The position numbers and the translations under genes were made by a program. This document shows, piece after piece, positions 3,226 through 13,384 of a stretch of 13,384 nt of DNA. The first letter of the stretch is position 1. Each line of letters begins with the position of its first letter. The stretch lies in the sequence record MK327931.1; one strand, written 5' to 3'. The notes under the pieces are model-generated. The model did not search any database. It saw nothing but the letters and a program-made list of their open reading frames with translations, and was not told where the DNA came from.

Positions 3226-3226
3226 A

Positions 3227-3448
3227 TTAAACACATACTCCATTAGCTGTAGCATCACGTAAAGCTGTCAAATACTTCTGTACGGCTTGCTCTTGCTTAT
3301 TTGTACCTAAAAGTATATACATCCATAATTCACTGTAATGTACATCTTGTGTATAAGGGTCATTGTAACTTTTTGATAATATAGCATCAAATTCAGATGC
3401 ATGAACCCTTGTGAACTTAAGAATATCTTGTTGTGTTATGATTCTCAT
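3227..3448 (-). CDS. Family A paralog A28
   Basis: LLGTNKQEQAVQKYLTAL; ATGA overlap. Confidence 0.9.
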   Translation of the reverse strand: MRIITQQDILKFTRVHASEFDAILSKSYNDPYTQDVHYSELWMYILLGTNKQEQAVQKYLTALRDATANGVCV

Positions 3449-3660
3449 ATCTTTTCCTGTACAATCTGTATAAGAATACCTATGTGTGAATTAACAGTTC
3501 TCTCTTGATGCTGTGTTCCTAAGAGTGTCAGTACTATCATATCTGAACGCAAAAGATTTTTTTCAAGTTCACTTATATCAGTTCTTGAATCAAGTGCCAT
3601 ATATTTGTGATTATTCTTCCTGAATAGTGCCAAGTACTCTTGGTTTGATATTATCTTCAT
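3445..3660 (-). CDS. Family A paralog A27
   Basis: LLGTQHQERTVNSHIGIL; ATGA overlap. Confidence 0.9.
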   Translation of the reverse strand: MKIISNQEYLALFRKNNHKYMALDSRTDISELEKNLLRSDMIVLTLLGTQHQERTVNSHIGILIQIVQEKI

Positions 3661-3872
3661 AGTTTACTTTTAATTTCCATTAAAAGTGCTCTAATATGCT
3701 CATTGACAAATCGCTCTTGGGAATCTGTGTCTAGGGTGAGAAGCATTCTTAAATCGGAACCTCTGATGGTATATTCTAAATCATTCTTTGATTCTCGCAT
3801 AAGTTTCTGAAAGGATGAGAAGTGTAATCCCATGAGTTCAATGTATTCTGCTGTTCCTAGTGGTTTTGGCAT
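3657..3872 (-). CDS. Family A paralog A26 (G>D variant)
   Basis: TLDTDSQERFVNEHIRAL; ends IKSKL. Confidence 0.9.
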   Translation of the reverse strand: MPKPLGTAEYIELMGLHFSSFQKLMRESKNDLEYTIRGSDLRMLLTLDTDSQERFVNEHIRALLMEIKSKL

Positions 3873-4078
3873 TTTAGTTCAATAGCTCGTTTAAGTGTAT
3901 TAATATAATCTTTAATGTCGTGTTCTTGATAGTTCGTTCCAAGGGTAGCTAGAACATAGACTTCATTTCTCTTAATAATTTTATCCATATCTGGTATATC
4001 TGATGTGTTAATGACGAAGAGCTTCAAAAACAGTCCATTTATGATTGTTAGGTATTCTACATCGGTAATGATTTTCAT
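3857..4078 (-). CDS. Family A paralog A25
   Basis: TLGTNYQEHDIKDYINTL. Start moved to MKIIT (4078, ATGA overlap). Confidence 0.9.
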   Translation of the reverse strand: MKIITDVEYLTIINGLFLKLFVINTSDIPDMDKIIKRNEVYVLATLGTNYQEHDIKDYINTLKRAIELKCQNH

Positions 4079-4296
4079 TTGCATTTGCATTTTCTCAGTA
4101 CTGATTCTTTAAGTTCATTGATGTAGCACTCTACATATTCTTCTTGTAGGTTTGTTCCGATATGTAACAGTACTCTTAAATCTGCTCTCAGTACTTCTTT
4201 GTCATCTTCATCTATATCAGACAGTGTTATGTTTAAGAATTTACTTGAACTCTCTATAAGTAATATTACTGAATCACCTTTGCTTAAAATTTTCAT
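4075..4296 (-). CDS. Family A paralog A24
   Basis: HIGTNLQEEYVECYINEL. Confidence 0.9.
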   Translation of the reverse strand: MKILSKGDSVILLIESSSKFLNITLSDIDEDDKEVLRADLRVLLHIGTNLQEEYVECYINELKESVLRKCKCK

Positions 4297-4504
4297 AATC
4301 TCTTTTTGCTTTCCTCGCCAAAAGGTACATATACGATTCTTCGTATTGTGCTTGGTAGTTTGTGTTTAAGAGTCGAAACAACTTCTGTTCTGCTAGAACT
4401 AGTTGCTTATCTTCATAACAACGGTAGCGTATCAACTTTTTGTATTCGATGTTGATTACATCCATTACTATAAGCCCATGTTCATCATCTGTCAAGTGTT
4501 TCAT
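4274..4504 (-). CDS. Family A paralog A23 (G>N variant)
   Basis: LLNTNYQAQYEESYMYLL; starts MKHLTDDE like A9. Confidence 0.9.
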   Translation of the reverse strand: MKHLTDDEHGLIVMDVINIEYKKLIRYRCYEDKQLVLAEQKLFRLLNTNYQAQYEESYMYLLARKAKRDYENFKQR

Positions 4505-4743
4505 GCATTTTTTCTTTTTCTTATATGTTTAGTTAAAAGGTATATTAGTTTTCTGATGTATTCTTCTTGATAGTTTGTTCCTAAGAGTGCAAGAAGTTTT
4601 GCTTCAACTAAAGCTAGTTGTCGTTCTTCGAATGTGTGTTCCAGTATGTACTTGGGGTTTGATTTTTTAGCGTAAGCACTATTAGTCTTCATTACAATCT
4701 TATGATATTCATTAGCTGTTAGGATTTTTAAATACTTGATCAT
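4501..4743 (-). CDS. Family A paralog A22
   Basis: LLGTNYQEEYIRKLIYLL. Confidence 0.9.
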   Translation of the reverse strand: MIKYLKILTANEYHKIVMKTNSAYAKKSNPKYILEHTFEERQLALVEAKLLALLGTNYQEEYIRKLIYLLTKHIRKRKNA

Positions 4744-4963
4744 GTATCTTTTCCTTTATAGAGAATTTAAGATATCGAAGCATACTTTCAATGTAATACT
4801 CTTGTCTGTCAGTGCCAAGAAAGTACATGAGTTGAATGTATAAAACTTCTGCACTCCTTTCCGCTGGAGACTTGTTTGTGTCGTTTGGAAGTTGATTTGT
4901 ATGTTTTCTTGATTTAATTAGTCGTTCTTTTAACTCATCGTCTGTTAAGTATTTCATTTTCAT
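4712..4963 (-). CDS. Family A paralog A21
   Basis: FLGTDRQEYYIESMLRYL; close to A20 (PAERSAEVL shared). Confidence 0.9.
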   Translation of the reverse strand: MKMKYLTDDELKERLIKSRKHTNQLPNDTNKSPAERSAEVLYIQLMYFLGTDRQEYYIESMLRYLKFSIKEKIHDQVFKNPNS

Positions 4964-5189
4964 TTACTTTTTCCTTAATAGTGATTTTAAGATATCTAAT
5001 CATACGTGCAACATATTCCTCTTGTCTATCAGTTCCCAGAAGATATGGTAGTGATTGGAATAATACTTCTGCACTCCTTTCTGCTGGGGTTTGGTTTAGG
5101 TCAATTGGACGTTTATTGGTATATCTCTTGGCACGAACTAATCTCTCGACGTATTCATTATAGGTTAAGTATATCATTTCATTTTGCAT
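4935..5189 (-). CDS. Family A paralog A20
   Basis: LLGTDRQEEYVARMIRYL. Confidence 0.9.
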   Translation of the reverse strand: MQNEMIYLTYNEYVERLVRAKRYTNKRPIDLNQTPAERSAEVLFQSLPYLLGTDRQEEYVARMIRYLKITIKEKVNENEILNRR

Positions 5190-5409
5190 TTACTTTTTCC
5201 TTAATACTCATTATAAGATGTTCAATCATATTTTGAACCATAAATTCTTGTTTATCAGTTCCAAGAACGTATGGTAGCTTCTGAAACAATACATTTGCAG
5301 ATACTTCAGATATTGATTGATTTGGAACGAACTTAAGAGTAATGTTTTTGGTTTTTAACATCTTCTCTTGAAATTCTTCATTCGTTAAGTATATCATTTC
5401 ATTTTGCAT
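5179..5409 (-). CDS. Family A paralog A19
   Basis: VLGTDKQEFMVQNMIEHL; N-terminus MQNEMIYLT identical to A20. Confidence 0.9.
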   Translation of the reverse strand: MQNEMIYLTNEEFQEKMLKTKNITLKFVPNQSISEVSANVLFQKLPYVLGTDKQEFMVQNMIEHLIMSIKEKVNAK

Positions 5410-5625
5410 TTACATTCTCTCATATATATTTTGGGTTAAAAGGTCAATCCAGATTTCCACATATCGTTGTTGGTGTTGCGTCCCTAACAGTACACCCAAC
5501 TTAGCTTCACACTCTAATAACAATCTGGTTTTGTATGGTAGACTTTGGAATCCTATAGTAGCATCTAATTTGGTAATTGCATAGTTGATTCGGATGAATC
5601 TTTCTTGCAATGTGATGTTGTTCAT
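5410..5625 (-). CDS. Family A paralog A18
   Basis: LLGTQHQQRYVEIWIDLL. Confidence 0.9.
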   Translation of the reverse strand: MNNITLQERFIRINYAITKLDATIGFQSLPYKTRLLLECEAKLGVLLGTQHQQRYVEIWIDLLTQNIYERM

Positions 5626-5885
5626 TTCTTAGTACACCTCAGTGGTTGGGTCATTTGATAAAAGTACAGCTTACCTTTGATTTCCAGTAGTAACTCCGCG
5701 ATTAAGCGATTTACTTCTGTATCTTGATAGTTTGTTCCTAAGAATACACCCATCTTTAACTCACGCATCATAATCATTTTCTTACTGTGTTGAATTTCTG
5801 GGTTGTGATAGATTGTATTACGTTTGTGCGTAATTTTTGTCATACGCTCGGTATATTCATCTTTACTTAAATTGATCATTTGCAT
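5622..5885 (-). CDS. Family A paralog A17
   Basis: FLGTNYQDTEVNRLIAEL. Start moved to MQMINLSK (5885; GAGGT 8 nt upstream). Confidence 0.9.
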   Translation of the reverse strand: MQMINLSKDEYTERMTKITHKRNTIYHNPEIQHSKKMIMMRELKMGVFLGTNYQDTEVNRLIAELLLEIKGKLYFYQMTQPLRCTKK

Positions 5886-5914
5886 GTTCATCAACCTCAC
5901 ATTTATTTTCAATA

Positions 5915-6154
5915 CTATTCTTTAGTTTGTAGATATAGTTTTCTTCCAATGTATCTCTTAAGTGCGATTATGTATTCATCTACATAATACTCCTGATAGT
6001 TTGTTCCTATGAATGCACCCACCTTTAACTCAAGTTTCATAATCATCTTATTTCCGTGTTTAATGACTTCTCCGTGATGGATTTCATTAAGTCCAGGTGC
6101 AATTTTCACCAGGCGTTCTTTATATTTTGCTTGAGATAATTTAATCATTTTCAT
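5915..6154 (-). CDS. Family A paralog A16
   Basis: FIGTNYQEYYVDEYIIAL. Start moved to MKMIKLS (6154; AAGGGT upstream). Confidence 0.9.
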   Translation of the reverse strand: MKMIKLSQAKYKERLVKIAPGLNEIHHGEVIKHGNKMIMKLELKVGAFIGTNYQEYYVDEYIIALKRYIGRKLYLQTKE

Positions 6155-6155
6155 G

Positions 6156-6386
6156 TTAATTACCCTTACATTTATTTTCAATACTATTCATGAGTTCTAT
6201 AAGATAGTTTTCTACCTTACCTTCCTGATAGTTAGTCCCTAGGAAGTTGCACAACACGGCTTCTATGATTTTGATTTTCCTGATATCAGGCTTCAATCTT
6301 TTGTTATTGAATATTTGAATCCTTATATCTCTGGATGCATTTAAACGTTTTTGATATTCATGGTAAGTTAAATGAATCATTTTCAT
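6156..6386 (-). CDS. Family A paralog A15
   Basis: FLGTNYQEGKVENYLIEL. Confidence 0.9.
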   Translation of the reverse strand: MKMIHLTYHEYQKRLNASRDIRIQIFNNKRLKPDIRKIKIIEAVLCNFLGTNYQEGKVENYLIELMNSIENKCKGN

Positions 6387-6601
6387 TTACGTTTAACCTC
6401 TCGCTGGAGGGCATCAATTAACATCAGTACAGCATTCTCTTGATAGTTTGTTCCTAAGACTGAAAGCATCTTTATCTCATTTACTAAAATCAACTTCTTT
6501 GAGGGTTCAATAATGTGACTATCATAAACGGCCTTACGTGCTGGATAAGTTTTCGCCAGTATAACATAAAATTCGTCTTTACTTAAATTAATCATTTGCA
6601 T
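6383..6601 (-). CDS. Family A paralog A14
   Basis: VLGTNYQENAVLMLIDAL. Confidence 0.9.
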   Translation of the reverse strand: MQMINLSKDEFYVILAKTYPARKAVYDSHIIEPSKKLILVNEIKMLSVLGTNYQENAVLMLIDALQREVKRK

Positions 6602-6810
6602 TTACTTTTAACCTCTTTCTGTAGAGCGTCAATCCATAGATCTACATACATTTGTTGATAGTTTGTGCCTAAGAGTGCACCTACATAGAGTTCAGTTACT
6701 AGTGCGTGCTTAAGGTTAGCTTGGATGCTCTTATCGCTTGATATCATTCTCCTTCTGCTTCCACATGTTTTCAGGAGTCTGATGTATTCAAAGCCTTGTA
6801 AATTTCTCAT
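6592..6810 (-). CDS. Family A paralog A13
   Basis: LLGTNYQQMYVDLWIDAL. Confidence 0.9.
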   Translation of the reverse strand: MRNLQGFEYIRLLKTCGSRRRMISSDKSIQANLKHALVTELYVGALLGTNYQQMYVDLWIDALQKEVKSKCK

Positions 6811-7022
6811 ATTTTGGATACCACCTTGTTACGTAAGGAACTTAATAATACGTCAGTGTAGATGTTTTGATAGTTTGTCCCTACGAATACACCCAACTTC
6901 ATTTCAGCTATTATAACACATTTGTCCTCTTGTGCAATAGATTTGTTTAACACAATACTATACACTTTTGATTTGATAGTTTGTAACCTCCAATGATACT
7001 GATACTCATTAAGGATTATCAT
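6807..7022 (-). CDS. Family A paralog A12
   Basis: FVGTNYQNIYTDVLLSSL. Confidence 0.9.
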   Translation of the reverse strand: MIILNEYQYHWRLQTIKSKVYSIVLNKSIAQEDKCVIIAEMKLGVFVGTNYQNIYTDVLLSSLRNKVVSKI

Positions 7023-7257
7023 TCTCTTTCCTCCAGATTTCGGTTCTCATGTGTTGGCAGTGTGCATCAATATATTGCTCTATCGATCTGGCGATTGCTG
7101 TTTTATCAGTGCCTGTCATCAGTACAAGCATCTCGGCCTCACAGTGAAGTAAACGCATGATATCATAGGGTAATATTTCAGATACCGTGTCATAGTGTTT
7201 CTGTGCCAGTGTCTGCAATAGTTTACAATACATTTTGTGATTTAGTCTTTGTCGCAT
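7009..7257 (-). CDS. Family A paralog A11 (divergent)
   Basis: EAEMLVLMTGTDKTAIARSIEQYIDAH; lacks the conserved Q. Start placed at MRQRL (7257). Confidence 0.75.
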   Translation of the reverse strand: MRQRLNHKMYCKLLQTLAQKHYDTVSEILPYDIMRLLHCEAEMLVLMTGTDKTAIARSIEQYIDAHCQHMRTEIWRKENDNP

Positions 7258-7493
7258 TGTTTCTTCCATTCTCTTCTGGCTTGGCGGGTTTTATCTGATA
7301 TTTCGTTTCTCAATGCAGAGATATATCGTAGAGTGAACAGTTCTTGATAGTTAGTCCCTATGAATTTATTAAGATATACATCAGCGTTGACGATATCAGC
7401 TTCACGGGAATTATAAAGTTTATTGTTAGTGCGAAGGGTGTTTAGAAGAGAGAAGAGGGCAGTCTGATACTCAGTGCTTGATAAAGTTTTCAT
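7242..7493 (-). CDS. Family A paralog A10
   Basis: FIGTNYQELFTLRYISAL. Start moved to MKTLSSTEY (7493). Confidence 0.9.
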   Translation of the reverse strand: MKTLSSTEYQTALFSLLNTLRTNNKLYNSREADIVNADVYLNKFIGTNYQELFTLRYISALRNEISDKTRQARREWKKQCDKD

Positions 7494-7728
7494 ATTTTTC
7501 CACAATTCGTTCATTTAGTTTTATCTGTATAAGATCCATTAGTTGTTCAAGATAATCGGTACAATATTTCTCTTGATATTGGGTTCCCACAAAGTACAGC
7601 AACCATAGCTCATGAACTTTAACTTTCATCTCGTTCCATGAAAGTGCATCGTCATCGTAGATTACTCTTGCTTCTGGGGTGAGCTTTCGAATTCTAAGTG
7701 AATATTCATCGTCCGTCAAGTGTTTCAT
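7471..7728 (-). CDS. Family A paralog A9
   Basis: FVGTQYQEKYCTDYLEQL. Confidence 0.9.
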   Translation of the reverse strand: MKHLTDDEYSLRIRKLTPEARVIYDDDALSWNEMKVKVHELWLLYFVGTQYQEKYCTDYLEQLMDLIQIKLNERIVEKYENFIKH

Positions 7729-7883
7729 TTACATTTATCCCTTATTAGATTTGTGAGTGCAACTATGTGTTCATGGATATAAAAATTTTGATGAGAAGTT
7801 CCAAGAAAGTACAGCATCCATCCCTCACTCTGCTCGACTTCTAGTTTAGTATCGAGTTGGTCAGATATGTTAATGAAAACCAT
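7725..7883 (-). CDS. Family A paralog A8 (short, 52 aa)
   Basis: Not in the track. Manual translation MVFINISDQLDTKLEVEQSEGWMLYFLGTSHQNFYIHEHIVALTNLIRDKCK; TAATG and ATGA overlaps on its two sides. Confidence 0.85.
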   Translation of the reverse strand: MVFINISDQLDTKLEVEQSEGWMLYFLGTSHQNFYIHEHIVALTNLIRDKCK

Positions 7884-8107
7884 TAGTTCTTTTCCTTTCT
7901 TTCTATTTGTTTCATAAGAACATCGATATACTCACCCGCAAACCTATTCTGATACTGCGTCCCCATGAATTCCAACATCCATACTTCAGCAACCTTTTCT
8001 TCAATTTCAGTCCATTGTAAGTACATCATAGTGAAGTAAATGGTGTTCTCTTTTTTTCTGGCACTCTTAGCACGGGCCTCGTATTCAAAGTTATTAATGA
8101 TGTTCAT
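7883..8107 (-). CDS. Family A paralog A7
   Basis: FMGTQYQNRFAGEYIDVL. Start moved to MNIIN (8107). Confidence 0.9.
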   Translation of the reverse strand: MNIINNFEYEARAKSARKKENTIYFTMMYLQWTEIEEKVAEVWMLEFMGTQYQNRFAGEYIDVLMKQIERKEKN

Positions 8108-8321
8108 TACATTTGTCCATAATGTAATTCTTGAGTGCAACTATGTGTGCAATAACATACTCTTCCTGGAAGTTCGTCCCCAGTACAGCCAACATGCGTA
8201 CATCGGTGGTGTTTATCTTGTGTTCCAATCGAGTTAAACCTTTTATTTGTAAAAGGGTATCGTATTTGTTTAATGCATCAATGATAATTCTCATCTTCTC
8301 AATATTACTTAAATGTTTCAT
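8094..8321 (-). CDS. Family A paralog A6
   Basis: VLGTNFQEEYVIAHIVAL. Confidence 0.9.
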   Translation of the reverse strand: MKHLSNIEKMRIIIDALNKYDTLLQIKGLTRLEHKINTTDVRMLAVLGTNFQEEYVIAHIVALKNYIMDKCNEHH

Positions 8322-8530
8322 AGTTTACTCTTAATGTAGTTCTGAAGTTCAATTAAGTATTTCCCTACATAATACTCCTGAAAGTCTGTATCCAAAAATG
8401 CACCCAAAAGTAAATCCTTCTCCATTGCCCTTGATAAGTTAAGGTCTGCATTTGAAAGGTATATAAGTAATATTTCAGTCTGGACAGAATTAAAACGTTT
8501 CTTATATTCTTCAGGTGTTAATATAATCAT
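8318..8530 (-). CDS. Family A paralog A5 (G>D variant)
   Basis: FLDTDFQEYYVGKYLIEL. Confidence 0.9.
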   Translation of the reverse strand: MIILTPEEYKKRFNSVQTEILLIYLSNADLNLSRAMEKDLLLGAFLDTDFQEYYVGKYLIELQNYIKSKL

Positions 8531-8742
8531 AATTTGCTCCTGATGTATTTCTCAAGAGATGACAAATACTTTTCCTCATAATACTCCTGATAGTCTGTTC
8601 CCAAGAATGCACCCATAAGTATTTCATTTTCCAATACCTCGGCTAAGTTTAAATCAGACGTCTCTTCGTATATTATGAGGATTTCAAGTTGTCTGGCAGC
8701 GATGCGTTCAGTATATTGATATGAGTTTTCTATAATAATCAT
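8527..8742 (-). CDS. Family A paralog A4
   Basis: FLGTDYQEYYEEKYLSSL; close to A5. Confidence 0.9.
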   Translation of the reverse strand: MIIIENSYQYTERIAARQLEILIIYEETSDLNLAEVLENEILMGAFLGTDYQEYYEEKYLSSLEKYIRSKL

Positions 8743-8948
8743 ATTTTACTCTTAATATCTTCTATTAAAAATCGAATCCATTCTTCAACATAATCTTCCT
8801 GATGGTTTGTGTTCAGTACAGCCAACATGCGGATCTCTGCTCTTGCAACTTCAATTTCAGTTTTAGGCAGGTCTTTGCTGATATCCACCATTAAGTCCAT
8901 GTATTTCAAGATAAGACCGTATGATTGGGTTCGTGTTATAGTTTTCAT
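8739..8948 (-). CDS. Family A paralog A3 (G>N variant)
   Basis: VLNTNHQEDYVEEWIRFL. Confidence 0.9.
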   Translation of the reverse strand: MKTITRTQSYGLILKYMDLMVDISKDLPKTEIEVARAEIRMLAVLNTNHQEDYVEEWIRFLIEDIKSKI

Positions 8949-9145
8949 TGTTTCCTCGTGGACAATATTTTATTTTTCAATGTATCCATATATTGCCACA
9001 CCCATCTACCCTGATAGTTTGTTCCCAATGTAATCAAAAGGTATAACTCCATTCGTTCTACGTGTGTGTCTGTGTTGTAAATCTTTACGTAGTTTTTACG
9101 TAACAGTGATTGATATTCTTCTTTATTTAAAATACGCATTTTCAT
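8945..9145 (-). CDS. Family A paralog A2
   Basis: TLGTNYQGRWVWQYMDTL. Confidence 0.9.
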   Translation of the reverse strand: MKMRILNKEEYQSLLRKNYVKIYNTDTHVERMELYLLITLGTNYQGRWVWQYMDTLKNKILSTRKQ

Positions 9146-9339
9146 AGTTTACTCGTTATATCTTCAATTAAATACCAAATCCAATCGTTGACATACCTTT
9201 CCTGAAAGTTAGTTCCAATGAATAGTGCCATAATTAATTCACGCTTATAGGCAATACCACGGTCATGGGACTTATACATTATCATAGCCATGTTATTGAT
9301 AAGTCTTTCGTGGTGCTGTTCTTTAGTTAAAATACGCAT
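9142..9339 (-). CDS. Family A paralog A1 (first gene of the array)
   Basis: FIGTNFQERYVNDWIWYL. Start moved to MRILTKEQ (9339; GGGAG upstream; the track start abuts the -10 box). Confidence 0.9.
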   Translation of the reverse strand: MRILTKEQHHERLINNMAMIMYKSHDRGIAYKRELIMALFIGTNFQERYVNDWIWYLIEDITSKL

Positions 9340-9369
9340 AGGGACTCCCTTAAAATTAATATCAATCAT

Positions 9370-9397
9370 ATTTTATACGATTCATATAAAAAGTCAA
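9370..9397 (-). promoter_or_regulatory. Predicted promoter of the family A operon
   Basis: TTGACT-16 nt-TAAAAT, 30 nt upstream of the A1 start. Confidence 0.65.
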
Positions 9398-9494
9398 TAA
9401 CATTTTATTCGTAATACCCCTTTATCGAAGTCGCTAAGGTTACCCGCCCTTTAGCCCCCTACGCATTTTGCCATAGTCCAATCCCTTTTATTTC

Positions 9495-9560
9495 AAAAAA
9501 GTCAAGGGATTACCTATGCATTTTTTTAACGCATAATTTTAAAAACGCCTTGACTTTTTT
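9495..9560. terminator. Long inverted repeat, possible bidirectional terminator
   Basis: AAAAAAGTCAAGG (9495-9507) and CCTTGACTTTTTT (9548-9560) form a perfect 13 bp inverted repeat ending in a T-tract on both strands, enclosing a second 8 bp stem (9515-9535). Confidence 0.5.
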
Positions 9561-9588
9561 CTGAATCAGTACTAGATCCCTTTACGCA

Positions 9589-9798
9589 TTAATCCTTCGT
9601 TACGCTAACGATTATCTGTGTATCCCCGTAGTCCTGCCATACTTCCACGCCATCGGTCGCCCTGGTTAGTCGTGCTGTCATCTGCTTAATGGTCTTAGGC
9701 TTTAGTGGAACCTGTTGCAGTACTGTACGCATAGCATCATTGACGTTATCATGTACGCCTGCAATAGTACCTAGAACGCTGTATACTGTATAGAACAT
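9589..9798 (-). CDS. Hypothetical protein (69 aa)
   Basis: ORF track; AGGAGG 8 nt upstream. Confidence 0.85.
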   Translation of the reverse strand: MFYTVYSVLGTIAGVHDNVNDAMRTVLQQVPLKPKTIKQMTARLTRATDGVEVWQDYGDTQIIVSVTKD

Positions 9799-9822
9799 AT
9801 GTATGCCCTCCTGATATAGTTA

Positions 9823-9842
9823 AGGCCGCTACAAGGCGGCCT
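9823..9842 (-). promoter_or_regulatory. Leader/intergenic hairpin
   Basis: AGGCCGC-6 nt-GCGGCCT, a perfect 7 bp stem just upstream of the RBS. Confidence 0.6.
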
Positions 9843-9866
9843 ATGATGTTTGGTGATGTGTAACGC

Positions 9867-10268
9867 TTACAGTCCTAAGATAGTGCGTGCTTCGTTACGT
9901 TCCGTACACAGCTGCATGATGTGAGCAAGTAAGTCCTTGCTAATGTATCCGGTGTTCATAGCTTCACGAATAGATACATCATACGCACCGAACCCCGTGC
10001 GAACGATACGCACATCATTCAGGTTAGTATTATAGATACCGCCGAGATCAACGGCTTCGAATACTACATCAACAGAATATTCATTGTTGCCATCGTGGAA
10101 GTTTTCCAGTGCAATAGTATTGGATACCGCCCAACGTTTGCAGTTTCCAATGATGCGGCACTGTTCCGGTTGGATAGTACCATTACTTACAGCGTACTCC
10201 AGTGCATCTTTACCAAAAGTCCGAGCCAGTACTAAAACGTCAGCGAAGGAATTGATTGAGAAGGTCAT
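9867..10268 (-). CDS. Hypothetical protein (133 aa)
   Basis: Start moved to MTFSINS (10268; AAGGAG upstream). The track extension runs through the leader hairpin. Confidence 0.85.
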   Translation of the reverse strand: MTFSINSFADVLVLARTFGKDALEYAVSNGTIQPEQCRIIGNCKRWAVSNTIALENFHDGNNEYSVDVVFEAVDLGGIYNTNLNDVRIVRTGFGAYDVSIREAMNTGYISKDLLAHIMQLCTERNEARTILGL

Positions 10269-10288
10269 GATAAAACTCCTTAATTTAG

Positions 10289-10350
10289 GAGGGAGAACCA
10301 TTTCCCCCTCTCTATGTAAAACATTATACTTGATTCTAAGTACTATGCAA
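10289..10350 (-). promoter_or_regulatory. Cassette module: promoter plus leader hairpin
   Basis: TTGCAT-16-TATAAT (10350-10323), then hairpin GAGGGGGAA-ATGG-TTCTCCCTC (10310-10289). Confidence 0.85.
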
Positions 10351-10357
10351 GTACTTT

Positions 10358-10690
10358 TTACATTTTAATACCTGGATTCAGGTAGCGGTGAGATCCATAT
10401 TCTGGATCGGTTTCGGTCCAGTACTGTAAATCGATAGTACCTTTCGCGTTAATCTTGTCTACCAGCTTATTCATCTTAGTGTATACTACGTCAGCATCGA
10501 TGCGTTTAAAGCCAGTAGCTTTAGTGAAGTAGTAGTGATTTGCTTCACTATCATTAAGGATATACCGAGCACCGTTTGCAGTCTGTGCGATAATGATTGA
10601 GTATTCTACTTCCCGATCCAGACCGTCGATGAATACAGATGAAACATTGGTACGGATGAAAGCTTTAACGATAGCGATTGAAGTACTCAT
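10358..10690 (-). CDS. Hypothetical protein (110 aa)
   Basis: ORF track; AGGAG RBS; C-terminal IDLQYWTETDPEYGS motif. Confidence 0.85.
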   Translation of the reverse strand: MSTSIAIVKAFIRTNVSSVFIDGLDREVEYSIIIAQTANGARYILNDSEANHYYFTKATGFKRIDADVVYTKMNKLVDKINAKGTIDLQYWTETDPEYGSHRYLNPGIKM

Positions 10691-10710
10691 TTTGAATCTC
10701 CTAACTTTGT

Positions 10711-10772
10711 GGGCCGTCGCACCATTGCCGCCCTACGAGATACATTATTGCAGTACTGATATACTTTGTCAA
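10711..10772 (-). promoter_or_regulatory. Cassette module, variant
   Basis: TTGACA-17-AATAAT; the upstream half is identical to the 12723 and 13217 copies; imperfect hairpin GGGCGGCA-ATGG-TGCGACGGCCC. Confidence 0.7.
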
Positions 10773-10885
10773 TACTTTTTTTATTAATAGTTTTCACCCC
10801 ACCAGCAGATAGTTACTCACCGTTATTAACTATATATTTTAGATACACTCCTGCACCCAGTGGGCTAGTTTTTGTCTATGCGTAT

Positions 10886-10914
10886 ATAATAGCAAAGGGA
10901 CTGACCGGAGTCAA
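10886..10914 (-). promoter_or_regulatory. Orphan sigma70-type promoter
   Basis: TTGACT-17-TATTAT with a TG extended -10, overlapping a terminator-like hairpin. Confidence 0.6.
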
Positions 10915-10925
10915 TCCCTTTTTTT
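10894..10925. terminator. Intrinsic terminator-like hairpin
   Basis: Minus strand: GGGAUUGAC-UCCG-GUCAGUCCC (UNCG-type tetraloop) followed by UUU; plus strand followed by T7. Lies 12 nt after the stop of 10937..11137. Confidence 0.7.
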
Positions 10926-10936
10926 ATTCTTTTTTG

Positions 10937-11137
10937 TTAGATGATTCTCCAATCTTCTACGATCATGGTAAGATAACGGACCATCGATTCAAGTGATTCG
11001 AATTCCCGATAGTCTGCCGCTCCACCAGCGGTACAAGTACAGCCGATTAAACCATTTTGTAATTCCTTAATCTGTACATCGATAAGGTTGGCTTTAGCTT
11101 CTTTCAGTACTTCAACCAGGGCGATAGCGATAGACAT
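10937..11137 (-). CDS. Hypothetical protein (66 aa)
   Basis: ORF track; GGAG RBS; has its own promoter module. Confidence 0.85.
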   Translation of the reverse strand: MSIAIALVEVLKEAKANLIDVQIKELQNGLIGCTCTAGGAADYREFESLESMVRYLTMIVEDWRII

Positions 11138-11160
11138 AATGTTTTACTCCAAACTATTGA

Positions 11161-11220
11161 CGGGAGAACTATTCCCCCGCTCTATGTAAAACATTATACA
11201 TTACTGGTTAGTACTGTCAA
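11161..11220 (-). promoter_or_regulatory. Cassette module: promoter plus leader hairpin
   Basis: TTGACA-16-TATAAT (11220-11193); hairpin CGGGGGAA-TAG-TTCTCCCG. 11161-11199 is identical to 12136-12174. Confidence 0.9.
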
Positions 11221-11226
11221 ATAGTT

Positions 11227-11484
11227 TTATGAAATATCTTCGATGTAGTCGGCCCATTTCATTTTTTCAGTACTGTCAATGGCTACCGGATTATTTGGAT
11301 CAAACCATTCACCATTCCCGCAATACATACCCACGGCAACGGTTTTATATCCATCCTGTGCAGTACTCCACGACATAGCACGATAGATATGGCCTTTAAC
11401 TGGTTGCAATACTGGTAATGTTTTATGGTCTTCTACGTAGGCCATAGCTTGAGGATTTACCCGATATTGTGTGAACTGTTCCAT
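11227..11484 (-). CDS. Hypothetical protein (85 aa)
   Basis: ORF track; AAGGGG RBS. Confidence 0.85.
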   Translation of the reverse strand: MEQFTQYRVNPQAMAYVEDHKTLPVLQPVKGHIYRAMSWSTAQDGYKTVAVGMYCGNGEWFDPNNPVAIDSTEKMKWADYIEDIS

Positions 11485-11512
11485 TATGTTTCCCCTTGTA
11501 GTTAGTAAAGTT

Positions 11513-11541
11513 ATTACATCAGTACTATCAAGCTATGTCAA
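11513..11541 (-). promoter_or_regulatory. Promoter without a leader hairpin
   Basis: TTGACA-17-TGTAAT; AGTACT both in the spacer and upstream of the -35. Confidence 0.65.
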
Positions 11542-11560
11542 TAGTACTGAAATAAAACTT

Positions 11561-11785
11561 TTAGATTAGATTATTGATGCCGTTGATGGTAGACTCGCTT
11601 TCTTCTTTCTCCCATTGGCGGTAGTACTTCCATGCTTCATGATATGTGGCGATTAGTTCATCTTTTTGATCCTGAGTACATGCCAGTACTGAATCACGGT
11701 GAGCGGTTTTATAGATAGAATCGAATGATTTCTTCTCTTCTGCCAGGTTAGCTACTTCCCGCATCAGTTCATCAAAGTTAGCCAT
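11561..11785 (-). CDS. Hypothetical helical protein (74 aa)
   Basis: ORF track; AAGGAG RBS. Confidence 0.85.
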   Translation of the reverse strand: MANFDELMREVANLAEEKKSFDSIYKTAHRDSVLACTQDQKDELIATYHEAWKYYRQWEKEESESTINGINNLI

Positions 11786-11803
11786 TTTATTACTCCTTTT
11801 AGT

Positions 11804-11860
11804 GGGGGAGGATATCTCCCCCTATGCAAAACATTATACTTTGTTTTAGTTATTATGCAA
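11804..11860 (-). promoter_or_regulatory. Cassette module: promoter plus leader hairpin
   Basis: TTGCAT-16-TATAAT (11860-11833); hairpin GGGGGAG-ATATC-CTCCCCC. Confidence 0.85.
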
Positions 11861-12116
11861 GTACTTTTTTCATATAAAGATTATATTCTACACCGCCGTA
11901 ACCTTCTACGATGATATGTTTTGCGTTATCACGTTTGCACATAGTGAAACCGTTGTTGATGTGTTCTGCATTTTCCAGGGCGACATCACCGATAGCGGCA
12001 CATACGGCACTAATAACAGTATTCCGCAAAGTACTGGTATCATTAGCGGTCATAGTAGTTTGCAGTACTACGTTGTCGTATACGTGTGCATTGATAGTGA
12101 TTTCGATAGTGTTCAT
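11853..12116 (-). CDS. Hypothetical protein (87 aa)
   Basis: ORF track; AGGAG RBS; its last codons overlap the next promoter. Confidence 0.85.
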   Translation of the reverse strand: MNTIEITINAHVYDNVVLQTTMTANDTSTLRNTVISAVCAAIGDVALENAEHINNGFTMCKRDNAKHIIVEGYGGVEYNLYMKKVLA

Positions 12117-12134
12117 GGTGTATCTCCTGGACTG

Positions 12135-12195
12135 GCGGGAGAACTATTCCCCCGCTCTATGTAAAACATTATACGTTAATCTAACTACAATGCAA
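12135..12195 (-). promoter_or_regulatory. Cassette module: promoter plus leader hairpin
   Basis: TTGCAT-16-TATAAT (12195-12168); hairpin GCGGGGGAA-TAG-TTCTCCCGC. Confidence 0.9.
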
Positions 12196-12202
12196 GTACT
12201 TT

Positions 12203-12394
12203 TTAAATTTTATTTCCGATATAGTCCGGTCTATTCTTTTCGGTCATACGCTTTGCTAATGTTTGCATATGGCTTATTGCGTTTAATGTGTCTTCCTCCA
12301 GGGATGAATCAACATAATCAGGATCATTCTTCACCTTGCAATGATTATGATAGCGTAGTACTGCCAGTACTTTTTTAACTTCTTCTACTGTCAT
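12203..12394 (-). CDS. Hypothetical protein (63 aa)
   Basis: ORF track; ATGA-coupled to 12391..12663. Confidence 0.8.
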   Translation of the reverse strand: MTVEEVKKVLAVLRYHNHCKVKNDPDYVDSSLEEDTLNAISHMQTLAKRMTEKNRPDYIGNKI

Positions 12395-12663
12395 AATAAG
12401 TACCCCACTTCGTTAGCTTTCAGGTTAGTATCAATCATCAGTGGATTTTTGTAGTTCACAAAACGATTAGTTTTCTCGATAGCGAATCCCATATAATCCA
12501 GCTTACTAACAGTACATTCATTCTTAAAAACTTCTTTCGCTGCATCGATGGCTGATTGCATGGATAACCGACCATCTAAATTAATGTTTCCAAATGATCC
12601 ACCAGCAGAAGTAGGATTACCGTTCATATCTTTAATGATCATAGTAGCGGAGTAGCTGGACAT
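12391..12663 (-). CDS. Hypothetical protein (90 aa)
   Basis: ORF track; AAGGA RBS; has its own promoter module. Confidence 0.85.
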   Translation of the reverse strand: MSSYSATMIIKDMNGNPTSAGGSFGNINLDGRLSMQSAIDAAKEVFKNECTVSKLDYMGFAIEKTNRFVNYKNPLMIDTNLKANEVGYLL

Positions 12664-12685
12664 AATTTTGTTTCCTTTTAGTATC

Positions 12686-12744
12686 GGGGAGAACTATTCT
12701 CCCCTTGATGTAAACTATTATACAGTACTGATATACTTTGTCAA
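12686..12744 (-). repeat. 59 bp direct repeat, copy 1 (promoter plus hairpin module)
   Basis: Identical to 13180-13238; TTGACA-16-TATAAT followed by GGGGAGAA-TAG-TTCTCCCC. Confidence 0.95.
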
Positions 12745-12750
12745 ATACTT

Positions 12751-13158
12751 TTATTCGCCCATATAGATTAAGTTATCATCGCCTACATAGGGATCGCAAA
12801 CGTTGATTTCTTCGCAGTACTTCGTGAATACATCGCCATAGTGACCTAAACCACGATCCCAAAAACCAGTTCCGTGACCTTCGCGGGTAAGGAACAGATC
12901 ATGACCAGCTTGCTCATAACCGTAATCAATAAACATACCGCGAACTACTTCCAGATCATTACCGTGTTTCTCAATGAAGCGAGAACATGCAATCACCGCC
13001 GCTTGACGTGCTTCATCAGATAACTCATAATCTTCCAGGTAATCGCCGTTATCATTATGTACAGTACTGAATTGCATAGCTTCAATGTAAGCTACAACCA
13101 TTGCAGCATGATTTTTATCGTTAGTGATGTTCCGAGCGAGATTAGTAGTAGTAGACAT
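12751..13158 (-). CDS. Acidic hypothetical protein (135 aa) with a GHDxxLTRxGHGxGFWDR motif
   Basis: ORF track; AAGGA RBS; has its own promoter module. Confidence 0.9.
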   Translation of the reverse strand: MSTTTNLARNITNDKNHAAMVVAYIEAMQFSTVHNDNGDYLEDYELSDEARQAAVIACSRFIEKHGNDLEVVRGMFIDYGYEQAGHDLFLTREGHGTGFWDRGLGHYGDVFTKYCEEINVCDPYVGDDNLIYMGE

Positions 13159-13179
13159 GATTTTATTCCTTATTGTATT

Positions 13180-13238
13180 GGGGAGAACTATTCTCCCCTT
13201 GATGTAAACTATTATACAGTACTGATATACTTTGTCAA
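13180..13238 (-). repeat. 59 bp direct repeat, copy 2 (promoter plus hairpin module)
   Basis: Identical to 12686-12744. Confidence 0.95.
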
Positions 13239-13241
13239 TAC

Positions 13242-13384
13242 TTAATTACGTTTAAAATGATATGTGCCTTTATCATCCTGTACGCCCCACACTGATTTAC
13301 CATCAACACCAGTGAAACCGGATTGTAATTCAATATGGAAACCATTATTATCAACTACAAAAACTTTTTTATTTTCATCCCGAT
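13242..13384 (-). CDS. 3' end of a hypothetical protein that starts outside the window (...GFTGVDGKSVWGVQDDKGTYHFKRN)
   Basis: Manual translation: 46 open codons ending in TAA at 13244-13242, directly before the next -35 box, the same layout as the other cassettes. Confidence 0.7.
   Translation of the reverse strand, partial: RDENKKVFVVDNNGFHIELQSGFTGVDGKSVWGVQDDKGTYHFKRN

What the first reader, a model, noticed from the sequence alone, without database searches (positions are those of the whole stretch)
9589..13384. Gene-cassette array built from repeated promoter-hairpin-RBS modules
Seen: unrelated small genes are each fronted by a roughly 60-90 bp module, and the stop of one gene sits within a few nt of (or overlaps) the next A-tract/-35. 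Exact repeats are 59 bp (12686-12744 = 13180-13238), 39 bp (11161-11199 = 12136-12174) and 27 bp (10751-10777 = 13217-13243). Established: PeSL promoter/stem-loop repeats in RB49-type T4-like phages mediate modular gene shuffling and excision. Differences here are that the stem-loop lies downstream of the promoter and most cassettes have no terminator. Inference: a recombination-driven exchange platform for early host-takeover or anti-defence genes, producing nested 3'-coterminal transcripts with increasing dosage downstream.
Basis: partly seen in the sequence, partly recalled or inferred. Interest (0 to 1): 0.8.

Follow-up and report, generated by a model that had tools for sequence, protein, structure and literature searches.

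The report
Promoter-hairpin gene cassettes in phage terminal repeat
This stretch is the inner end of the 20.7-kb terminal repeat of a jumbo E. coli phage, where small unknown genes each sit behind a copy of the same strong promoter plus hairpin, and those copies mark the points where related phages have gained, lost or swapped genes.

Summary

All genes and modules lie on the minus strand. The window is 100% identical to Escherichia phage vB_EcoM_G17 (Asteriusvirus).

The DTR carries 53 small genes and 33 near-consensus sigma-70 promoters. Of these promoters, 23 are followed 10-14 nt after the -10 by a G-run/C-run hairpin, then a Shine-Dalgarno site and ATG. Module copies were found only inside the DTR.

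Comparison with relatives supports exchange at the modules:
- The 494-bp cassette between the 59-bp repeats is absent from four fetched relatives, which have a clean one-module empty site.
- Modules are mosaics of each other.
- G17 and fEgEco12 differ by a replacement bounded by promoter cores.
- An unrelated rV5-like phage shares the module and 12 cargo genes in scrambled order.

Cargo functions are unknown, and the hairpin's role (mRNA 5' stabiliser or insulator) is inferred.

Verdict: a variant of the PeSL promoter/stem-loop system of T4-like phages, sited in jumbo-phage terminal repeats.

Noticed in passing: an oriented array of Chi sites and a 23-fold excess of AGTACT.

The parts
9437..13384 (-). 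Inner 3.95 kb of the right copy of the 20,668-bp direct terminal repeat (DTR). The repeat continues about 16.7 kb beyond the window end. G+C rises from about 33% to about 40% at this boundary.
   Evidence: G17 record 1-20668 is identical to 350150-370817, with 0 mismatches; 350150 = window 9437. Composition. DTR length matches the PhageTerm result for Sharanji.
13159..13250 (-). Module M1: A/T tract, -35 13233-13238, -10 13211-13216, hairpin 13180-13198 (8 bp, loop TAG), SD, ATG at 13158. Upstream copy of the 59-bp repeat.
   Evidence: (MFE -13.3 kcal/mol, z -3.6)
12751..13158 (-). 135-aa cargo gene (phrog_1915, function unknown). Together with one module copy it forms the 494-bp cassette that is present in some relatives and absent in others.
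   Evidence: AF2 pLDDT 92, with no PDB match.
12664..12750 (-). Module M2: -35 12739-12744, -10 12717-12722, hairpin 12686-12704. Downstream copy of the 59-bp repeat.
12203..12663 (-). Two overlapping cargo genes, 90 aa (12391-12663, phrog_8099) and 63 aa (12203-12394, phrog_9599), served by one module. A Chi site lies at 12599-12606 (sense strand).
12117..12205 (-). Module M3: -35 12190-12195, -10 12168-12173, hairpin 12135-12155 (9 bp with one G.U). It is a mosaic: its spacer is identical to that of a module 13.4 kb away, and its hairpin half is identical to M6 (the 39-bp repeat).
11853..12116 (-). 87-aa cargo gene with no PHROG or Pfam family.
11786..11870 (-). Module M4: -35 11855-11860, -10 11833-11838, hairpin 11804-11822 (7 bp, loop of 5 nt; stem sequence differs from the others).
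11561..11785 (-). 74-aa cargo gene (phrog_24380).
11485..11550 (-). Module M5, without a hairpin: -35 11536-11541, 17-nt spacer, -10 TGTAAT 11513-11518, short leader.
11227..11484 (-). 85-aa cargo gene (phrog_34861).
11138..11226 (-). Module M6: -35 11215-11220, -10 11193-11198, hairpin 11160-11180 (two G.U pairs). M6 and its gene are absent from phage BF17.
   Evidence: (z -5.1)
10937..11137 (-). 66-aa cargo gene (phrog_14244), the last gene before the terminator. A Chi site lies at 11022-11029.
10886..10921 (-). Composite terminator/promoter. A 12-bp hairpin followed by a T-run holds a -35 (TTGACT) in its 5' arm and is followed by a TGnTATTAT extended -10. This is the classical PeSL-like arrangement; there are four copies in the DTR.
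   Evidence: ARNOLD terminator in the G17 record; MFE -19.9 kcal/mol, z -5.3
10778..10885 (-). Conserved non-coding leader downstream of the composite promoter, containing the motif CCCACNGGGTGC. Only this copy has an extra insert of about 23 nt that carries a Chi site (10799-10806).
   Evidence: (families D9, D12). No Rfam family.
10691..10777 (-). Module M7: -35 10767-10772, 17-nt spacer, -10 AATAAT 10744-10749, a different and imperfect hairpin. Its -35 and spacer equal those of M1 (the 27-bp repeat).
10358..10690 (-). 110-aa cargo gene (phrog_1507).
10269..10360 (-). Module M8: -35 10345-10350, -10 10323-10328, hairpin 10289-10310. A nearly identical module precedes the orthologous gene in Klebsiella phage fENko-Kae01.
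9867..10268 (-). 133-aa cargo gene (phrog_10173). The G17 record annotates it from an upstream in-frame ATG at 10301, inside the hairpin. Homologues occur in rV5-like, RB49-like, Eneladusvirus and RaK2-like phages.
9823..9842 (-). G+C-rich intergenic hairpin without a U-run, between the 133-aa gene and the SD of the 69-aa gene.
9589..9798 (-). 69-aa gene (phrog_17833), the last gene of the DTR. The order 133 aa then 69 aa at the inner DTR end is conserved in other genera.
9495..9560 (-). Long A-run/U-run hairpin (13-bp outer stem). It looks like a terminator in both directions and lies between the last DTR gene and the DTR boundary.
   Evidence: MFE -27 kcal/mol, z -3.5

Best explanation
The region is the promoter-distal end of the early-gene array that fills the 20.7-kb direct terminal repeat of an Asteriusvirus jumbo coliphage.

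**Module anatomy.** Each small gene, or pair of genes, sits behind a portable regulatory module made of:
- an A-rich UP-like tract that contains the previous gene's stop codon;
- a near-consensus sigma-70 promoter (-35, 16-nt spacer, TATAAT);
- an AT-rich discriminator ending in CAT, the predicted start;
- a purine-arm/pyrimidine-arm RNA hairpin in the first ~25 nt of the transcript;
- a strong Shine-Dalgarno site and ATG.

**Expression (inferred).** Unmodified host RNA polymerase fires at every module as soon as the DNA enters the cell. Terminators are rare (two in this 3.9 kb, about 12 for 33 promoters in the whole repeat). Transcripts would therefore form nested sets sharing a 3' end. The hairpin at or near each primary 5' end would hinder 5'-end-dependent decay by RppH and RNase E, and would keep the ribosome site free of upstream sequence.

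**Evolution (shown by comparison).** The 60-95 nt modules are copies of one another. They serve as patches of homology at which whole promoter-gene cassettes are inserted, deleted or replaced, both within the genus and between unrelated phages that carry the same module. This is how PeSL elements of T4-like phages work.

**Shown versus inferred.** Shown: anatomy, DTR location, copy relationships and natural indels at the modules. Inferred: early timing, nested transcripts, hairpin function and any host-takeover role of the cargo.
For: **Location.**
- The window is identical to G17.
- The DTR is exact and starts at window 9437.
- DTR lengths were determined independently for Sharanji (20,668 bp) and fEgEco12 (restriction mapping).

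**Density and confinement to the DTR.**
- 33 promoters in 20.7 kb, all on one strand, 11 of them perfect 12/12; 23 carry the hairpin at a fixed offset of 10-14 nt.
- 29 of 53 genes have their own promoter.
- The covariance model finds 27 hits in the DTR and none in 17 kb of adjacent unique DNA.
- blastn finds 34 places in G17 (two DTR copies) against 17 in Sharanji, whose record length implies one copy. That implies none outside the DTR.

**The hairpin acts at RNA level on the sense strand.**
- 15 G.T pairs have the G in the 5' arm, against 1 the other way.
- The sense strand folds 4-8 kcal/mol better than the antisense strand for M3, M6 and M8.
- There are 17 distinct stems with GC/AT and GC/CG exchanges.

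**Modules are copies and mosaics.** Spacer families differ by 4 mismatches or fewer; the chance of that for random 16-mers is 1.5e-4.

**Exchange at modules.**
- Clean empty site for the 494-bp cassette in CRJP21, phAPEC6, BF17 and Turkey3.
- The cassette protein occurs at >=80% identity in 11 records, against 37 for its neighbour.
- A G17/fEgEco12 replacement runs from just after one module's -10 to the next module's A-tract.
- A homologue of the same gene sits at a different array position in a metagenomic phage contig.

**Spread beyond the genus.**
- The same architecture occurs in the DTRs of fENko-Kae01 and RaK2-like Muenster, and near the start of Eneladusvirus records.
- It also occurs in the early region of rV5-like phage A73. 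Twelve of 34 A73 proteins there have homologues in the G17 DTR, in scrambled order, with up to 87% nucleotide identity.

**Early timing by analogy.**
- DTR genes of the related jumbo phage PA5oct are highly transcribed early (PMC7318152).
- Phage K terminal-repeat transcripts appear at 2 min (PMC9241854).

**Hairpin as stabiliser.** 5'-terminal stem-loops stabilise E. coli mRNAs; the primary references are listed in PMC3997798.
Against: - No transcript, start-site or half-life data exist for any Asteriusvirus in the searched literature.
- The formal covariation test is weak, because the hairpin arms are G-runs and C-runs. 86.8% of cells pair, but 86% also pair when the register is slid by one column, and double changes only modestly exceed shuffles.
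- With the start at the A of CAT, most hairpins leave about 5 unpaired nt. That is at the edge of what a 5' stabiliser tolerates (this limit is from my own knowledge of Emory, Bouvet and Belasco 1992).
- Ten of the 33 promoters lack the hairpin.
- Within the genus the array is mostly colinear at 94-100% identity.
- Two of the four further G17/fEgEco12 indels do not map to modules.
- The BF17 deletion junction lies in A-rich microhomology, not in the module core.
- Viable indels are expected at gene boundaries whatever the mechanism.
- Cargo function is unknown.
Confidence: 0.65

Rival explanations
1. The modules are simply strong early promoters with a conserved leader. They stay similar through functional constraint and old tandem duplication. 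Recombination at them is incidental, not a working exchange platform, and the array is inherited vertically.
For: - Gene order within the genus is largely fixed: colinear at 94-100% identity in the relatives compared, with only two indels in 3.9 kb.
- The two innermost genes (133 aa, 69 aa) keep their place in other genera.
- Two of the four G17/fEgEco12 indels lie away from modules.
Against: - Spacer sequences, which promoter function does not constrain, are identical between modules kilobases apart.
- Modules are mosaics.
- The 494-bp cassette has a clean empty site with duplicated 59-bp flanks.
- Cargo is shared in scrambled order with an unrelated phage subfamily, at up to 87% nucleotide identity.
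Confidence: 0.2
2. The inverted repeat works at the DNA level. It would be an operator for a dimeric phage repressor that shuts off early transcription, or a cruciform or protein target that promotes recombination, as the PeSL authors speculated for GGGG...CCCC.
For: - It is a palindrome placed just downstream of every start site, where a bound protein would block elongation.
- The conserved core is GGGGA...TCCCC.
- The PeSL authors raised this possibility.
- One recombination breakpoint lies at the edge of a hairpin.
Against: - 15 G.T pairs would be C.A mismatches on the other strand, so the two half-sites are not symmetric.
- Antisense folding is weaker.
- Stems, stem lengths (7-10 bp) and loops (3-5 nt, 11 different loop sequences) vary, which suits structure rather than sequence-specific dimer binding.
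Confidence: 0.1
3. The hairpins are transcription attenuators or terminators, as shown for PeSL stem-loops. They would limit read-through from upstream modules so that each gene depends mainly on its own promoter.
For: A PeSL stem-loop of similar composition reduced downstream reporter expression about as much as rrnB T1.
Against: - The hairpins are not followed by U-runs, and the terminator scan did not call them.
- They lie downstream of their own promoter's start, so they would attenuate their own transcript as well.
- Separate, canonical terminators with U-runs exist in the array.
Confidence: 0.08
4. The array is an integron-like, site-specific cassette system.
For: It is a one-directional array of promoter-proximal small cassettes separated by a repeated element with an inverted repeat.
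Against: - No recombinase domain was found in any window protein.
- The repeat is itself a promoter, whereas integron cassettes are promoterless.
- Crossover points vary within the module: inside the 59-bp core in one case, just after the -10 in another, and in A-rich microhomology in a third. That fits homologous or microhomology-mediated exchange.
Confidence: 0.02

Closest known systems
PeSL (promoter-early stem-loop) cassettes of T4-like phages RB49/phi1, T4/PST and KVP40/nt-1 (Arbiol et al. 2010, PMC2839356; Comeau et al. 2014, PMC4122927)
   Same: - AT-rich tract holding the upstream stop codon.
- Near-perfect sigma-70 promoter.
- polyG/polyC stem-loop with G-T pairs, then SD and ATG.
- Clusters among small ORFan genes.
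- Lies at insertion, deletion and replacement boundaries between close relatives.
- The cargo pool overlaps: the 133-aa gene has a 37%-identical homologue in RB49-like phages, where it sits behind a PeSL.
   Different: - The host phage is an Asteriusvirus jumbo phage, not a member of Straboviridae.
- The array fills the direct terminal repeat rather than internal hyperplastic regions.
- The stem-loop sits at a fixed place 10-14 nt after the -10, inside the transcript. In RB49-like JSE it overlaps the -10, and in PST it lies upstream of the promoter.
- The hairpins lack U-runs, so a terminator role is unlikely.
- A separate terminator-plus-promoter composite (10886-10921) plays the classical PeSL part.
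- Mini-circles have not been looked for.
Early or 'host-takeover' gene arrays in long terminal repeats: Bacillus phage SPO1 terminal redundancy and coliphage T5 pre-early region (both from my own knowledge), Staphylococcus phage K (PMC9241854), Pseudomonas jumbo phage PA5oct (PMC7318152)
   Same: - A long DTR packed with small unidirectional genes of unknown function behind strong host-type promoters.
- In PA5oct and phage K the DTR genes are the first and most highly transcribed.
   Different: - No expression data exist for Asteriusvirus.
- The uniform promoter-plus-5'-hairpin module and its role as a recombination joint have not been described for those phages in the papers read here.
5'-terminal stabiliser stem-loops of E. 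coli mRNAs (ompA, papA; Belasco laboratory papers listed in PMC3997798)
   Same: A stable hairpin at or within a few nucleotides of the predicted 5' end, upstream of a free ribosome-binding site.
   Different: - The start site is only predicted.
- Most copies would leave about 5 unpaired nt.
- The function is untested.
RpoD-like promoters with UP elements reported for Rak2-like phage CBB (PMC5259590)
   Same: The same phage clade, with sigma-70 promoters plus an UP-like element concentrated among short hypothetical genes, some of them in the terminal repeat.
   Different: That paper reports 18 promoters, only three of them in the DTR. It mentions no hairpin, no repeated module and no link to gene exchange.
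Integron gene cassettes
   Same: An array of single-gene units separated by a repeated element containing an inverted repeat.
   Different: There is no integrase and no attC-type site. Each unit brings its own promoter. Exchange appears to be driven by homology.

Membership tests
PeSL regulatory cassettes | AT-rich tract upstream of the -35 that contains the stop codon of the upstream gene | tested here: met
   Stops lie 6-8 nt before the -35 in M2, M3, M4 and M8.
PeSL regulatory cassettes | Near-consensus sigma-70 early promoter | tested here: met
   All eight window promoters score at least 10/12 and three are 12/12. The DTR holds 11 perfect promoters.
PeSL regulatory cassettes | Stem-loop with a G tract followed by a C tract, with G-T pairs, inside or next to the promoter (five positional subclasses, one of them downstream of the -10) | tested here: met
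   23 of 33 DTR promoters have one; the 5' arm is 96% purine; there are 16 G-T pairs. [quoted passage not shown]
PeSL regulatory cassettes | Shine-Dalgarno site and start codon at the 3' end of the element | tested here: met
PeSL regulatory cassettes | Sits at insertion, deletion or replacement boundaries between closely related phages | tested here: met
   Empty site for the 494-bp cassette. Replacement bounded by promoter cores. Two of the other indels are not at modules.
PeSL regulatory cassettes | The stem-loop terminates or attenuates transcription coming from upstream | not testable with these tools
   There is no U-run after the module hairpins and the scan did not call them. By sequence this is unlikely for the 5'-UTR hairpins and likely for the composite at 10886-10921.
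PeSL regulatory cassettes | Recombination between neighbouring elements yields excised mini-circles | not testable with these tools
   This needs read-level or physical data on phage DNA.
PeSL regulatory cassettes | Resident in a T4-type (Straboviridae) genome | tested here: not met
   The host genome is Asteriusvirus. Therefore it is filed as a variant that works like PeSL, not as a member of the original set.
Terminal-repeat early gene region | Lies inside the long direct terminal repeat | tested here: met
   supported
Terminal-repeat early gene region | Transcribed first after infection, by host RNA polymerase | not testable with these tools
   Only promoter sequence is available, plus analogy with PA5oct and phage K.
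Terminal-repeat early gene region | Products act on host functions | tested here: inconclusive
   Window proteins have no known domain. Elsewhere in the DTR of relatives, depositors annotate a Ser/Thr kinase, a DksA-like zinc finger, a GNAT acetyltransferase and 'spackle', and a ParE_like Pfam hit is recorded.
5'-terminal mRNA stabiliser hairpin | [quoted passage not shown] | tested here: inconclusive
   Hairpins of -13 to -18 kcal/mol. With the start at the A of CAT there are 1-5 unpaired nt, but the start is only predicted.
5'-terminal mRNA stabiliser hairpin | Lengthens transcript half-life | not testable with these tools
   This needs decay measurements.
Integron | Integrase gene with attI/attC recombination sites and promoterless cassettes | tested here: not met
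   No recombinase domain was found, and each unit carries a promoter.

The most novel reading that the evidence does not exclude
The long terminal repeats of Rak2-like jumbo phages (Asteriusvirus, the fENko-Kae01/7t3 group, Eneladusvirus, RaK2-like) may be an organised early-gene platform built to recombine.

Three features would work together:
- a shared promoter-hairpin module that acts as a universal joint;
- an array of Chi sites, oriented so that host RecBCD entering at the physical DNA ends is switched to loading RecA within the repeat;
- a dense palindrome (AGTACT) that overlaps the promoters.

Together these would drive repeat-to-repeat recombination and the trading of single-gene cassettes with unrelated coliphages, such as rV5-like phages, that carry the same module. 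That would amount to a homology-driven counterpart of the integron for phage early genes.
Probability: 0.3. Interest if true: 0.75.

Novelty: new variant of a known kind. Interest (0 to 1): 0.55.

Why it matters
**Reach of the PeSL principle.** If this holds, repeated promoter cassettes acting as joints for gene shuffling are not confined to T4-like phages. They also occur in the terminal repeats of at least four groups of jumbo phages and in rV5-like phages.

**Practical handles.**
- It gives a simple sequence rule for finding the early, fast-evolving accessory genes of these phages. Nearly all of those genes are of unknown function, and they are the likeliest place for host-takeover and counter-defence functions.
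- It explains why phages used in therapy differ by whole small genes at these sites.

**Possible expression design.** The fixed 5'-UTR hairpin may be a compact natural design for strong, context-independent expression in E. coli.

**Side observations.** The Chi array and the AGTACT excess bear on how a 370-kb linear genome survives RecBCD and how it joins its ends.

Tried and rejected
- **Rfam.** No family matched in the 37.7 kb around and including the window at gathering thresholds. The hairpins and the conserved leaders are therefore not known RNA families.
- **MAFFT alignment of modules (A1).** It put 3-nt and 4-nt loops in different registers. A covariance model (R1) was built and the sequences realigned.
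- **Formal covariation test.** It gave only weak support, because G-run and C-run arms still pair when slid by one column. I do not claim covariation as proof.
- **Cargo function.**
  - Pfam: one sub-threshold DUF7217 hit only. NCBIfam and PADLOC: nothing. PHROGs: unknown-function families only.
  - PDB sequence search of three proteins: nothing.
  - The 135-aa cassette protein gave a confident AlphaFold model (pLDDT 92). It matched no solved structure (best E 3, TM 0.27) and only uncharacterised phage proteins in BFVD.
- **Rejected ideas.**
  - N4-type hairpin promoters for a virion RNA polymerase: rejected because perfect sigma-70 promoters sit upstream and the hairpin lies downstream of the start.
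  - Lambda nut/boxB-like antitermination sites: rejected because the loops are not conserved (11 different loops).
- **Literature.** The Asteriusvirus genome papers, the CBB paper and the rV5 paper do not describe the module.
- **Not done.**
  - I did not scan IMG/VR or the metagenome collections for the module.
  - I did not fetch the middle 310 kb of the G17 genome. Absence of modules there rests on the 34-versus-17 count and on 20 kb of unique flanks.

Full report
**1. What the sequence is**

- The window is identical, base for base, to Escherichia phage vB_EcoM_G17 (MK327931.1, genus Asteriusvirus, 370,817 bp), record positions 340714-354097.
- The region matches Sharanji at 100% and about 30 other jumbo coliphages at 94-99%.
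- All genes in the window lie on the minus strand.

**2. Check of the observation**

- The three exact repeats are at the stated coordinates and cannot be extended. Dinucleotide shuffles of the window give a longest repeat of 13.9 bp on average, at most 19.
- Read on the minus strand, the region holds eight promoters.
  - Six have the full module: A-tract, -35 TTGACA or TTGCAT, 16-nt spacer, TATAAT, a conserved TTTACAT stretch, a 7-9 bp hairpin with a 3-5 nt loop starting 10-12 nt after the -10, SD and ATG.
  - Two lack the canonical hairpin.
- The stop codon of the preceding gene lies in the A-tract.
- The ten complete proteins belong to nine different PHROG families plus one with none.

**3.

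- The G17 record begins and ends with an exact 20,668-bp direct repeat: 1-20668 equals 350150-370817 with no mismatch.
- The right copy starts at window 9437, which is also where G+C jumps from about 33% to about 40%.
- The same repeat length was found for Sharanji with PhageTerm (PMC11895373). A 20,993-bp repeat was confirmed by restriction mapping for fEgEco12 (PMC13070987).
- The finding is therefore the inner 3.95 kb of the terminal repeat, and the array runs on for about 17 kb past the window end.
- Contents of the whole repeat:
  - 53 annotated genes, all in one direction;
  - 33 promoters by a strict pattern (41 at 10/12 or better), 11 of them perfect consensus;
  - 23 with the hairpin at the fixed offset;
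  - 12 annotated terminators.
- Module copies are confined to the repeat.
  - A covariance model built from them finds 27 hits in the repeat and none in the adjacent 17 kb.
  - blastn finds 34 places in G17, which has two repeat copies. It finds 17 in Sharanji, which is identical over the window region and whose record length implies one copy. That leaves none outside the repeat.

**4. The hairpin**

- The 23 hairpins have 17 different stems and 11 different loops.
- The 5' arm is 96% purine.
- 15 G.T pairs have the G in the 5' arm, against one the other way round.
- Where G.U pairs occur, the sense strand folds 4-8 kcal/mol better than the antisense strand.
- This points to an RNA structure in the sense transcript, not a symmetric DNA site.
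- Some stem positions switch between GC, AT and CG. However, the formal test on a model-based alignment is weak, because G-runs and C-runs still pair when slid by one column. I treat covariation as suggestive only.
- The conserved CAT, 7-9 nt after the -10, is the usual E. coli start context (my own knowledge). A start at that A would place the hairpin 1-5 nt from the 5' end.
- The hairpins have no U-run and were not called as terminators.
- The most economical reading is a 5' stabiliser or insulator of the ribosome site. The primary literature is listed in PMC3997798. This is inference.

**5. Are the modules recombination joints?**

Several independent comparisons say yes.

- **(a) A clean empty site.**
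  - The 494-bp unit between the 59-bp repeats (one module plus the 135-aa gene) is missing in CRJP21, phAPEC6, BF17 and Turkey3.
  - Each of these has a single module. Its left flank is that of the G17 upstream copy and its right flank is that of the downstream copy.
  - The cassette protein occurs at >=80% identity in 11 phage records, against 37 for the neighbouring 133-aa gene.
  - A 71%-identical homologue sits at a different position in a similar array on a metagenomic contig.
- **(b) Modules are mosaics.**
  - Spacers fall into families that are identical or nearly so across kilobases. The chance of 4 mismatches or fewer is 1.5e-4.
  - M3 combines the spacer of a module 13.4 kb away with the hairpin half of M6.
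- **(c) A replacement bounded by promoter cores.**
  - Between G17 and fEgEco12, an 891-nt segment is replaced by 192 nt.
  - The break starts just after the -10 and initial transcribed stretch of one module and ends at the A-tract and -35 of another. The promoter cores therefore frame the swapped hairpin-plus-gene unit.
- **(d) Counter-examples.**
  - Two other G17/fEgEco12 indels are not at modules.
  - BF17 lacks M6 and its gene, with a junction in A-rich microhomology.
  - The modules are therefore not the only route.
- **(e) Spread beyond the genus.**
  - The same architecture, sometimes with the same hairpin, is found in the repeat of Klebsiella phage fENko-Kae01. There, 7 of about 20 promoters have a perfect hairpin and 2 more an imperfect one.
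  - It is also found in Eneladusvirus and RaK2-like phages, and in the early region of the unrelated rV5-like phage A73.
  - Twelve of 34 A73 early-region proteins have homologues in the G17 repeat, in scrambled order, with up to 87% nucleotide identity that stops at gene ends.

**6. Comparison with what is known**

- PeSL elements are defined by:
  - an AT-rich tract;
  - a near-perfect sigma-70 promoter;
  - a polyG/polyC stem-loop with G-T pairs, in one of five positions;
  - an SD and start codon;
  - a location at indel boundaries in plastic regions.
- They form mini-circles, and their stem-loops terminate transcription (PMC2839356; PMC4122927).
- The modules here meet the sequence-level features and the comparative one.
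- They differ in four ways:
  - the host phage;
  - their location in the terminal repeat;
  - a fixed hairpin position inside the transcript, whereas the RB49-like phage JSE has it over the -10;
  - probably, the job of the hairpin.
- A separate unit at 10886-10921 is a true terminator whose 5' arm contains a -35, followed by an extended -10. It has four copies in the repeat and a conserved leader of about 100 nt. That unit is the closer structural match to classical PeSLs.
- Papers on this phage group report sigma-70 promoters with UP elements (CBB). None mentions the hairpin module or its link to gene exchange.
- Early timing is supported only by analogy. DTR genes of the related jumbo phage PA5oct are highly transcribed early, and terminal-repeat transcripts of phage K appear at 2 min.

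**7. Cargo**

- No window protein has a known domain or a solved relative.
- The mobile 135-aa protein gives a confident all-helical model with an invariant GxGFWDR motif. It matches no PDB structure and only uncharacterised phage proteins in BFVD.
- 'Host-takeover or anti-defence' therefore remains a guess for this window.
- Elsewhere in the repeat of relatives, depositors annotate a protein kinase, a DksA-like protein, an acetyltransferase and 'spackle'.

**8. Verdict**

- The feature is a new variant of a known kind: a PeSL-like promoter plus 5'-UTR-hairpin cassette system that fills the terminal repeats of jumbo phages.
- Interest is moderate.
- Two side observations deserve their own follow-up: an oriented array of Chi sites and a 23-fold excess of AGTACT.

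Noticed in passing
window 10799-10806, 11022-11029, 12599-12606; whole DTR = L001 17038-37705: - The E. coli Chi octamer GCTGGTGG occurs 10 times in the 20.7-kb repeat, against 0.18 expected from 200 shuffles. Nine of the ten are on the gene-sense strand. None occurs in 20 kb of flanking unique DNA.
- By orientation, the nine sense-strand sites would be read by RecBCD entering at the left physical end (left repeat copy). The single opposite-strand site lies 592 bp from the right physical end.
- fEgEco12 has 10 Chi on the sense strand and 2 on the other; fENko-Kae01 has 12 and 2.
[quoted passage not shown]
   Followed up: partly
window 9437-13384 (26 copies); L001 17038-37705 (132 copies); L015; L013: - The palindrome AGTACT is about 23-fold over-represented in the repeat: 132 observed against 5.8 in dinucleotide shuffles. 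Of the 26 window copies, 16 lie inside coding sequence.
- It overlaps the upstream edge of many -35 boxes and the last bases of many spacers.
- It is also enriched 9-11 fold in adjacent unique DNA, and in the repeats of fENko-Kae01 and an Erwinia jumbo phage. It is not enriched in rV5-like A73 or RB49-like JSE.
- No explanation yet. A binding site for a dimeric phage protein is one possibility.
   Followed up: partly
window 10778-10885; other copies at L001 21145-21250, 24417-24520, 27703-27810: - A conserved non-coding leader of about 100 nt follows the terminator-embedded promoter. It contains the motif CCCACNGGGTGC and then AGGAGTGTATCTA.
- The motif recurs in a distant metagenomic phage (L017) and, on the opposite strand, near the outer end of the repeat.
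- No Rfam family matches it. It could be a small RNA or a protein site.
   Followed up: partly
L001 34288-34429 and 24262-24438 (outside the window); L014 1977-2157: A tandem-promoter unit with a transcribed spacer of about 118 nt is conserved at 84-88% between G17 and the unrelated rV5-like phage A73. It is a candidate small RNA or structured leader.
   Followed up: no
window about 2980-9370, minus strand: About 30 tandem paralogous genes of about 70 aa (phrog_4148, unknown function) lie directly downstream of the repeat, behind a single promoter at 9397. Read-through from the right repeat copy would run into them. In BF17 a segment of about 500 bp carrying a 366-nt gene is inserted between that promoter and the first paralogue.
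   Followed up: partly
window 9437: G+C content steps from about 33% in the unique DNA to about 40% in the repeat, exactly at the repeat boundary. The repeat's genes therefore have a different composition from the rest of the genome.
   Followed up: no
window 10266-10301: The G17 record starts the 133-aa gene at an in-frame ATG at 10301, inside the module hairpin (giving 144 aa). The SD-preceded ATG at 10268 and the 132-position PHROG profile favour the shorter protein.
   Followed up: yes
L001 36100-37705 (outer end of the repeat, outside the window): The outermost ~1.6 kb of the repeat has no annotated gene. It contains promoter-like units on the opposite strand and a pair of Chi sites, one in each orientation.
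   Followed up: no
L016 1033-1287; L004, L009, L011 annotations: Elsewhere in the repeat of relatives, one 84-aa product has a ParE_like Pfam hit. Depositors annotate a Ser/Thr protein kinase, a DksA-like zinc-finger protein, a GNAT acetyltransferase and 'spackle'. These are hints at host-directed functions in the array outside the window.
   Followed up: no
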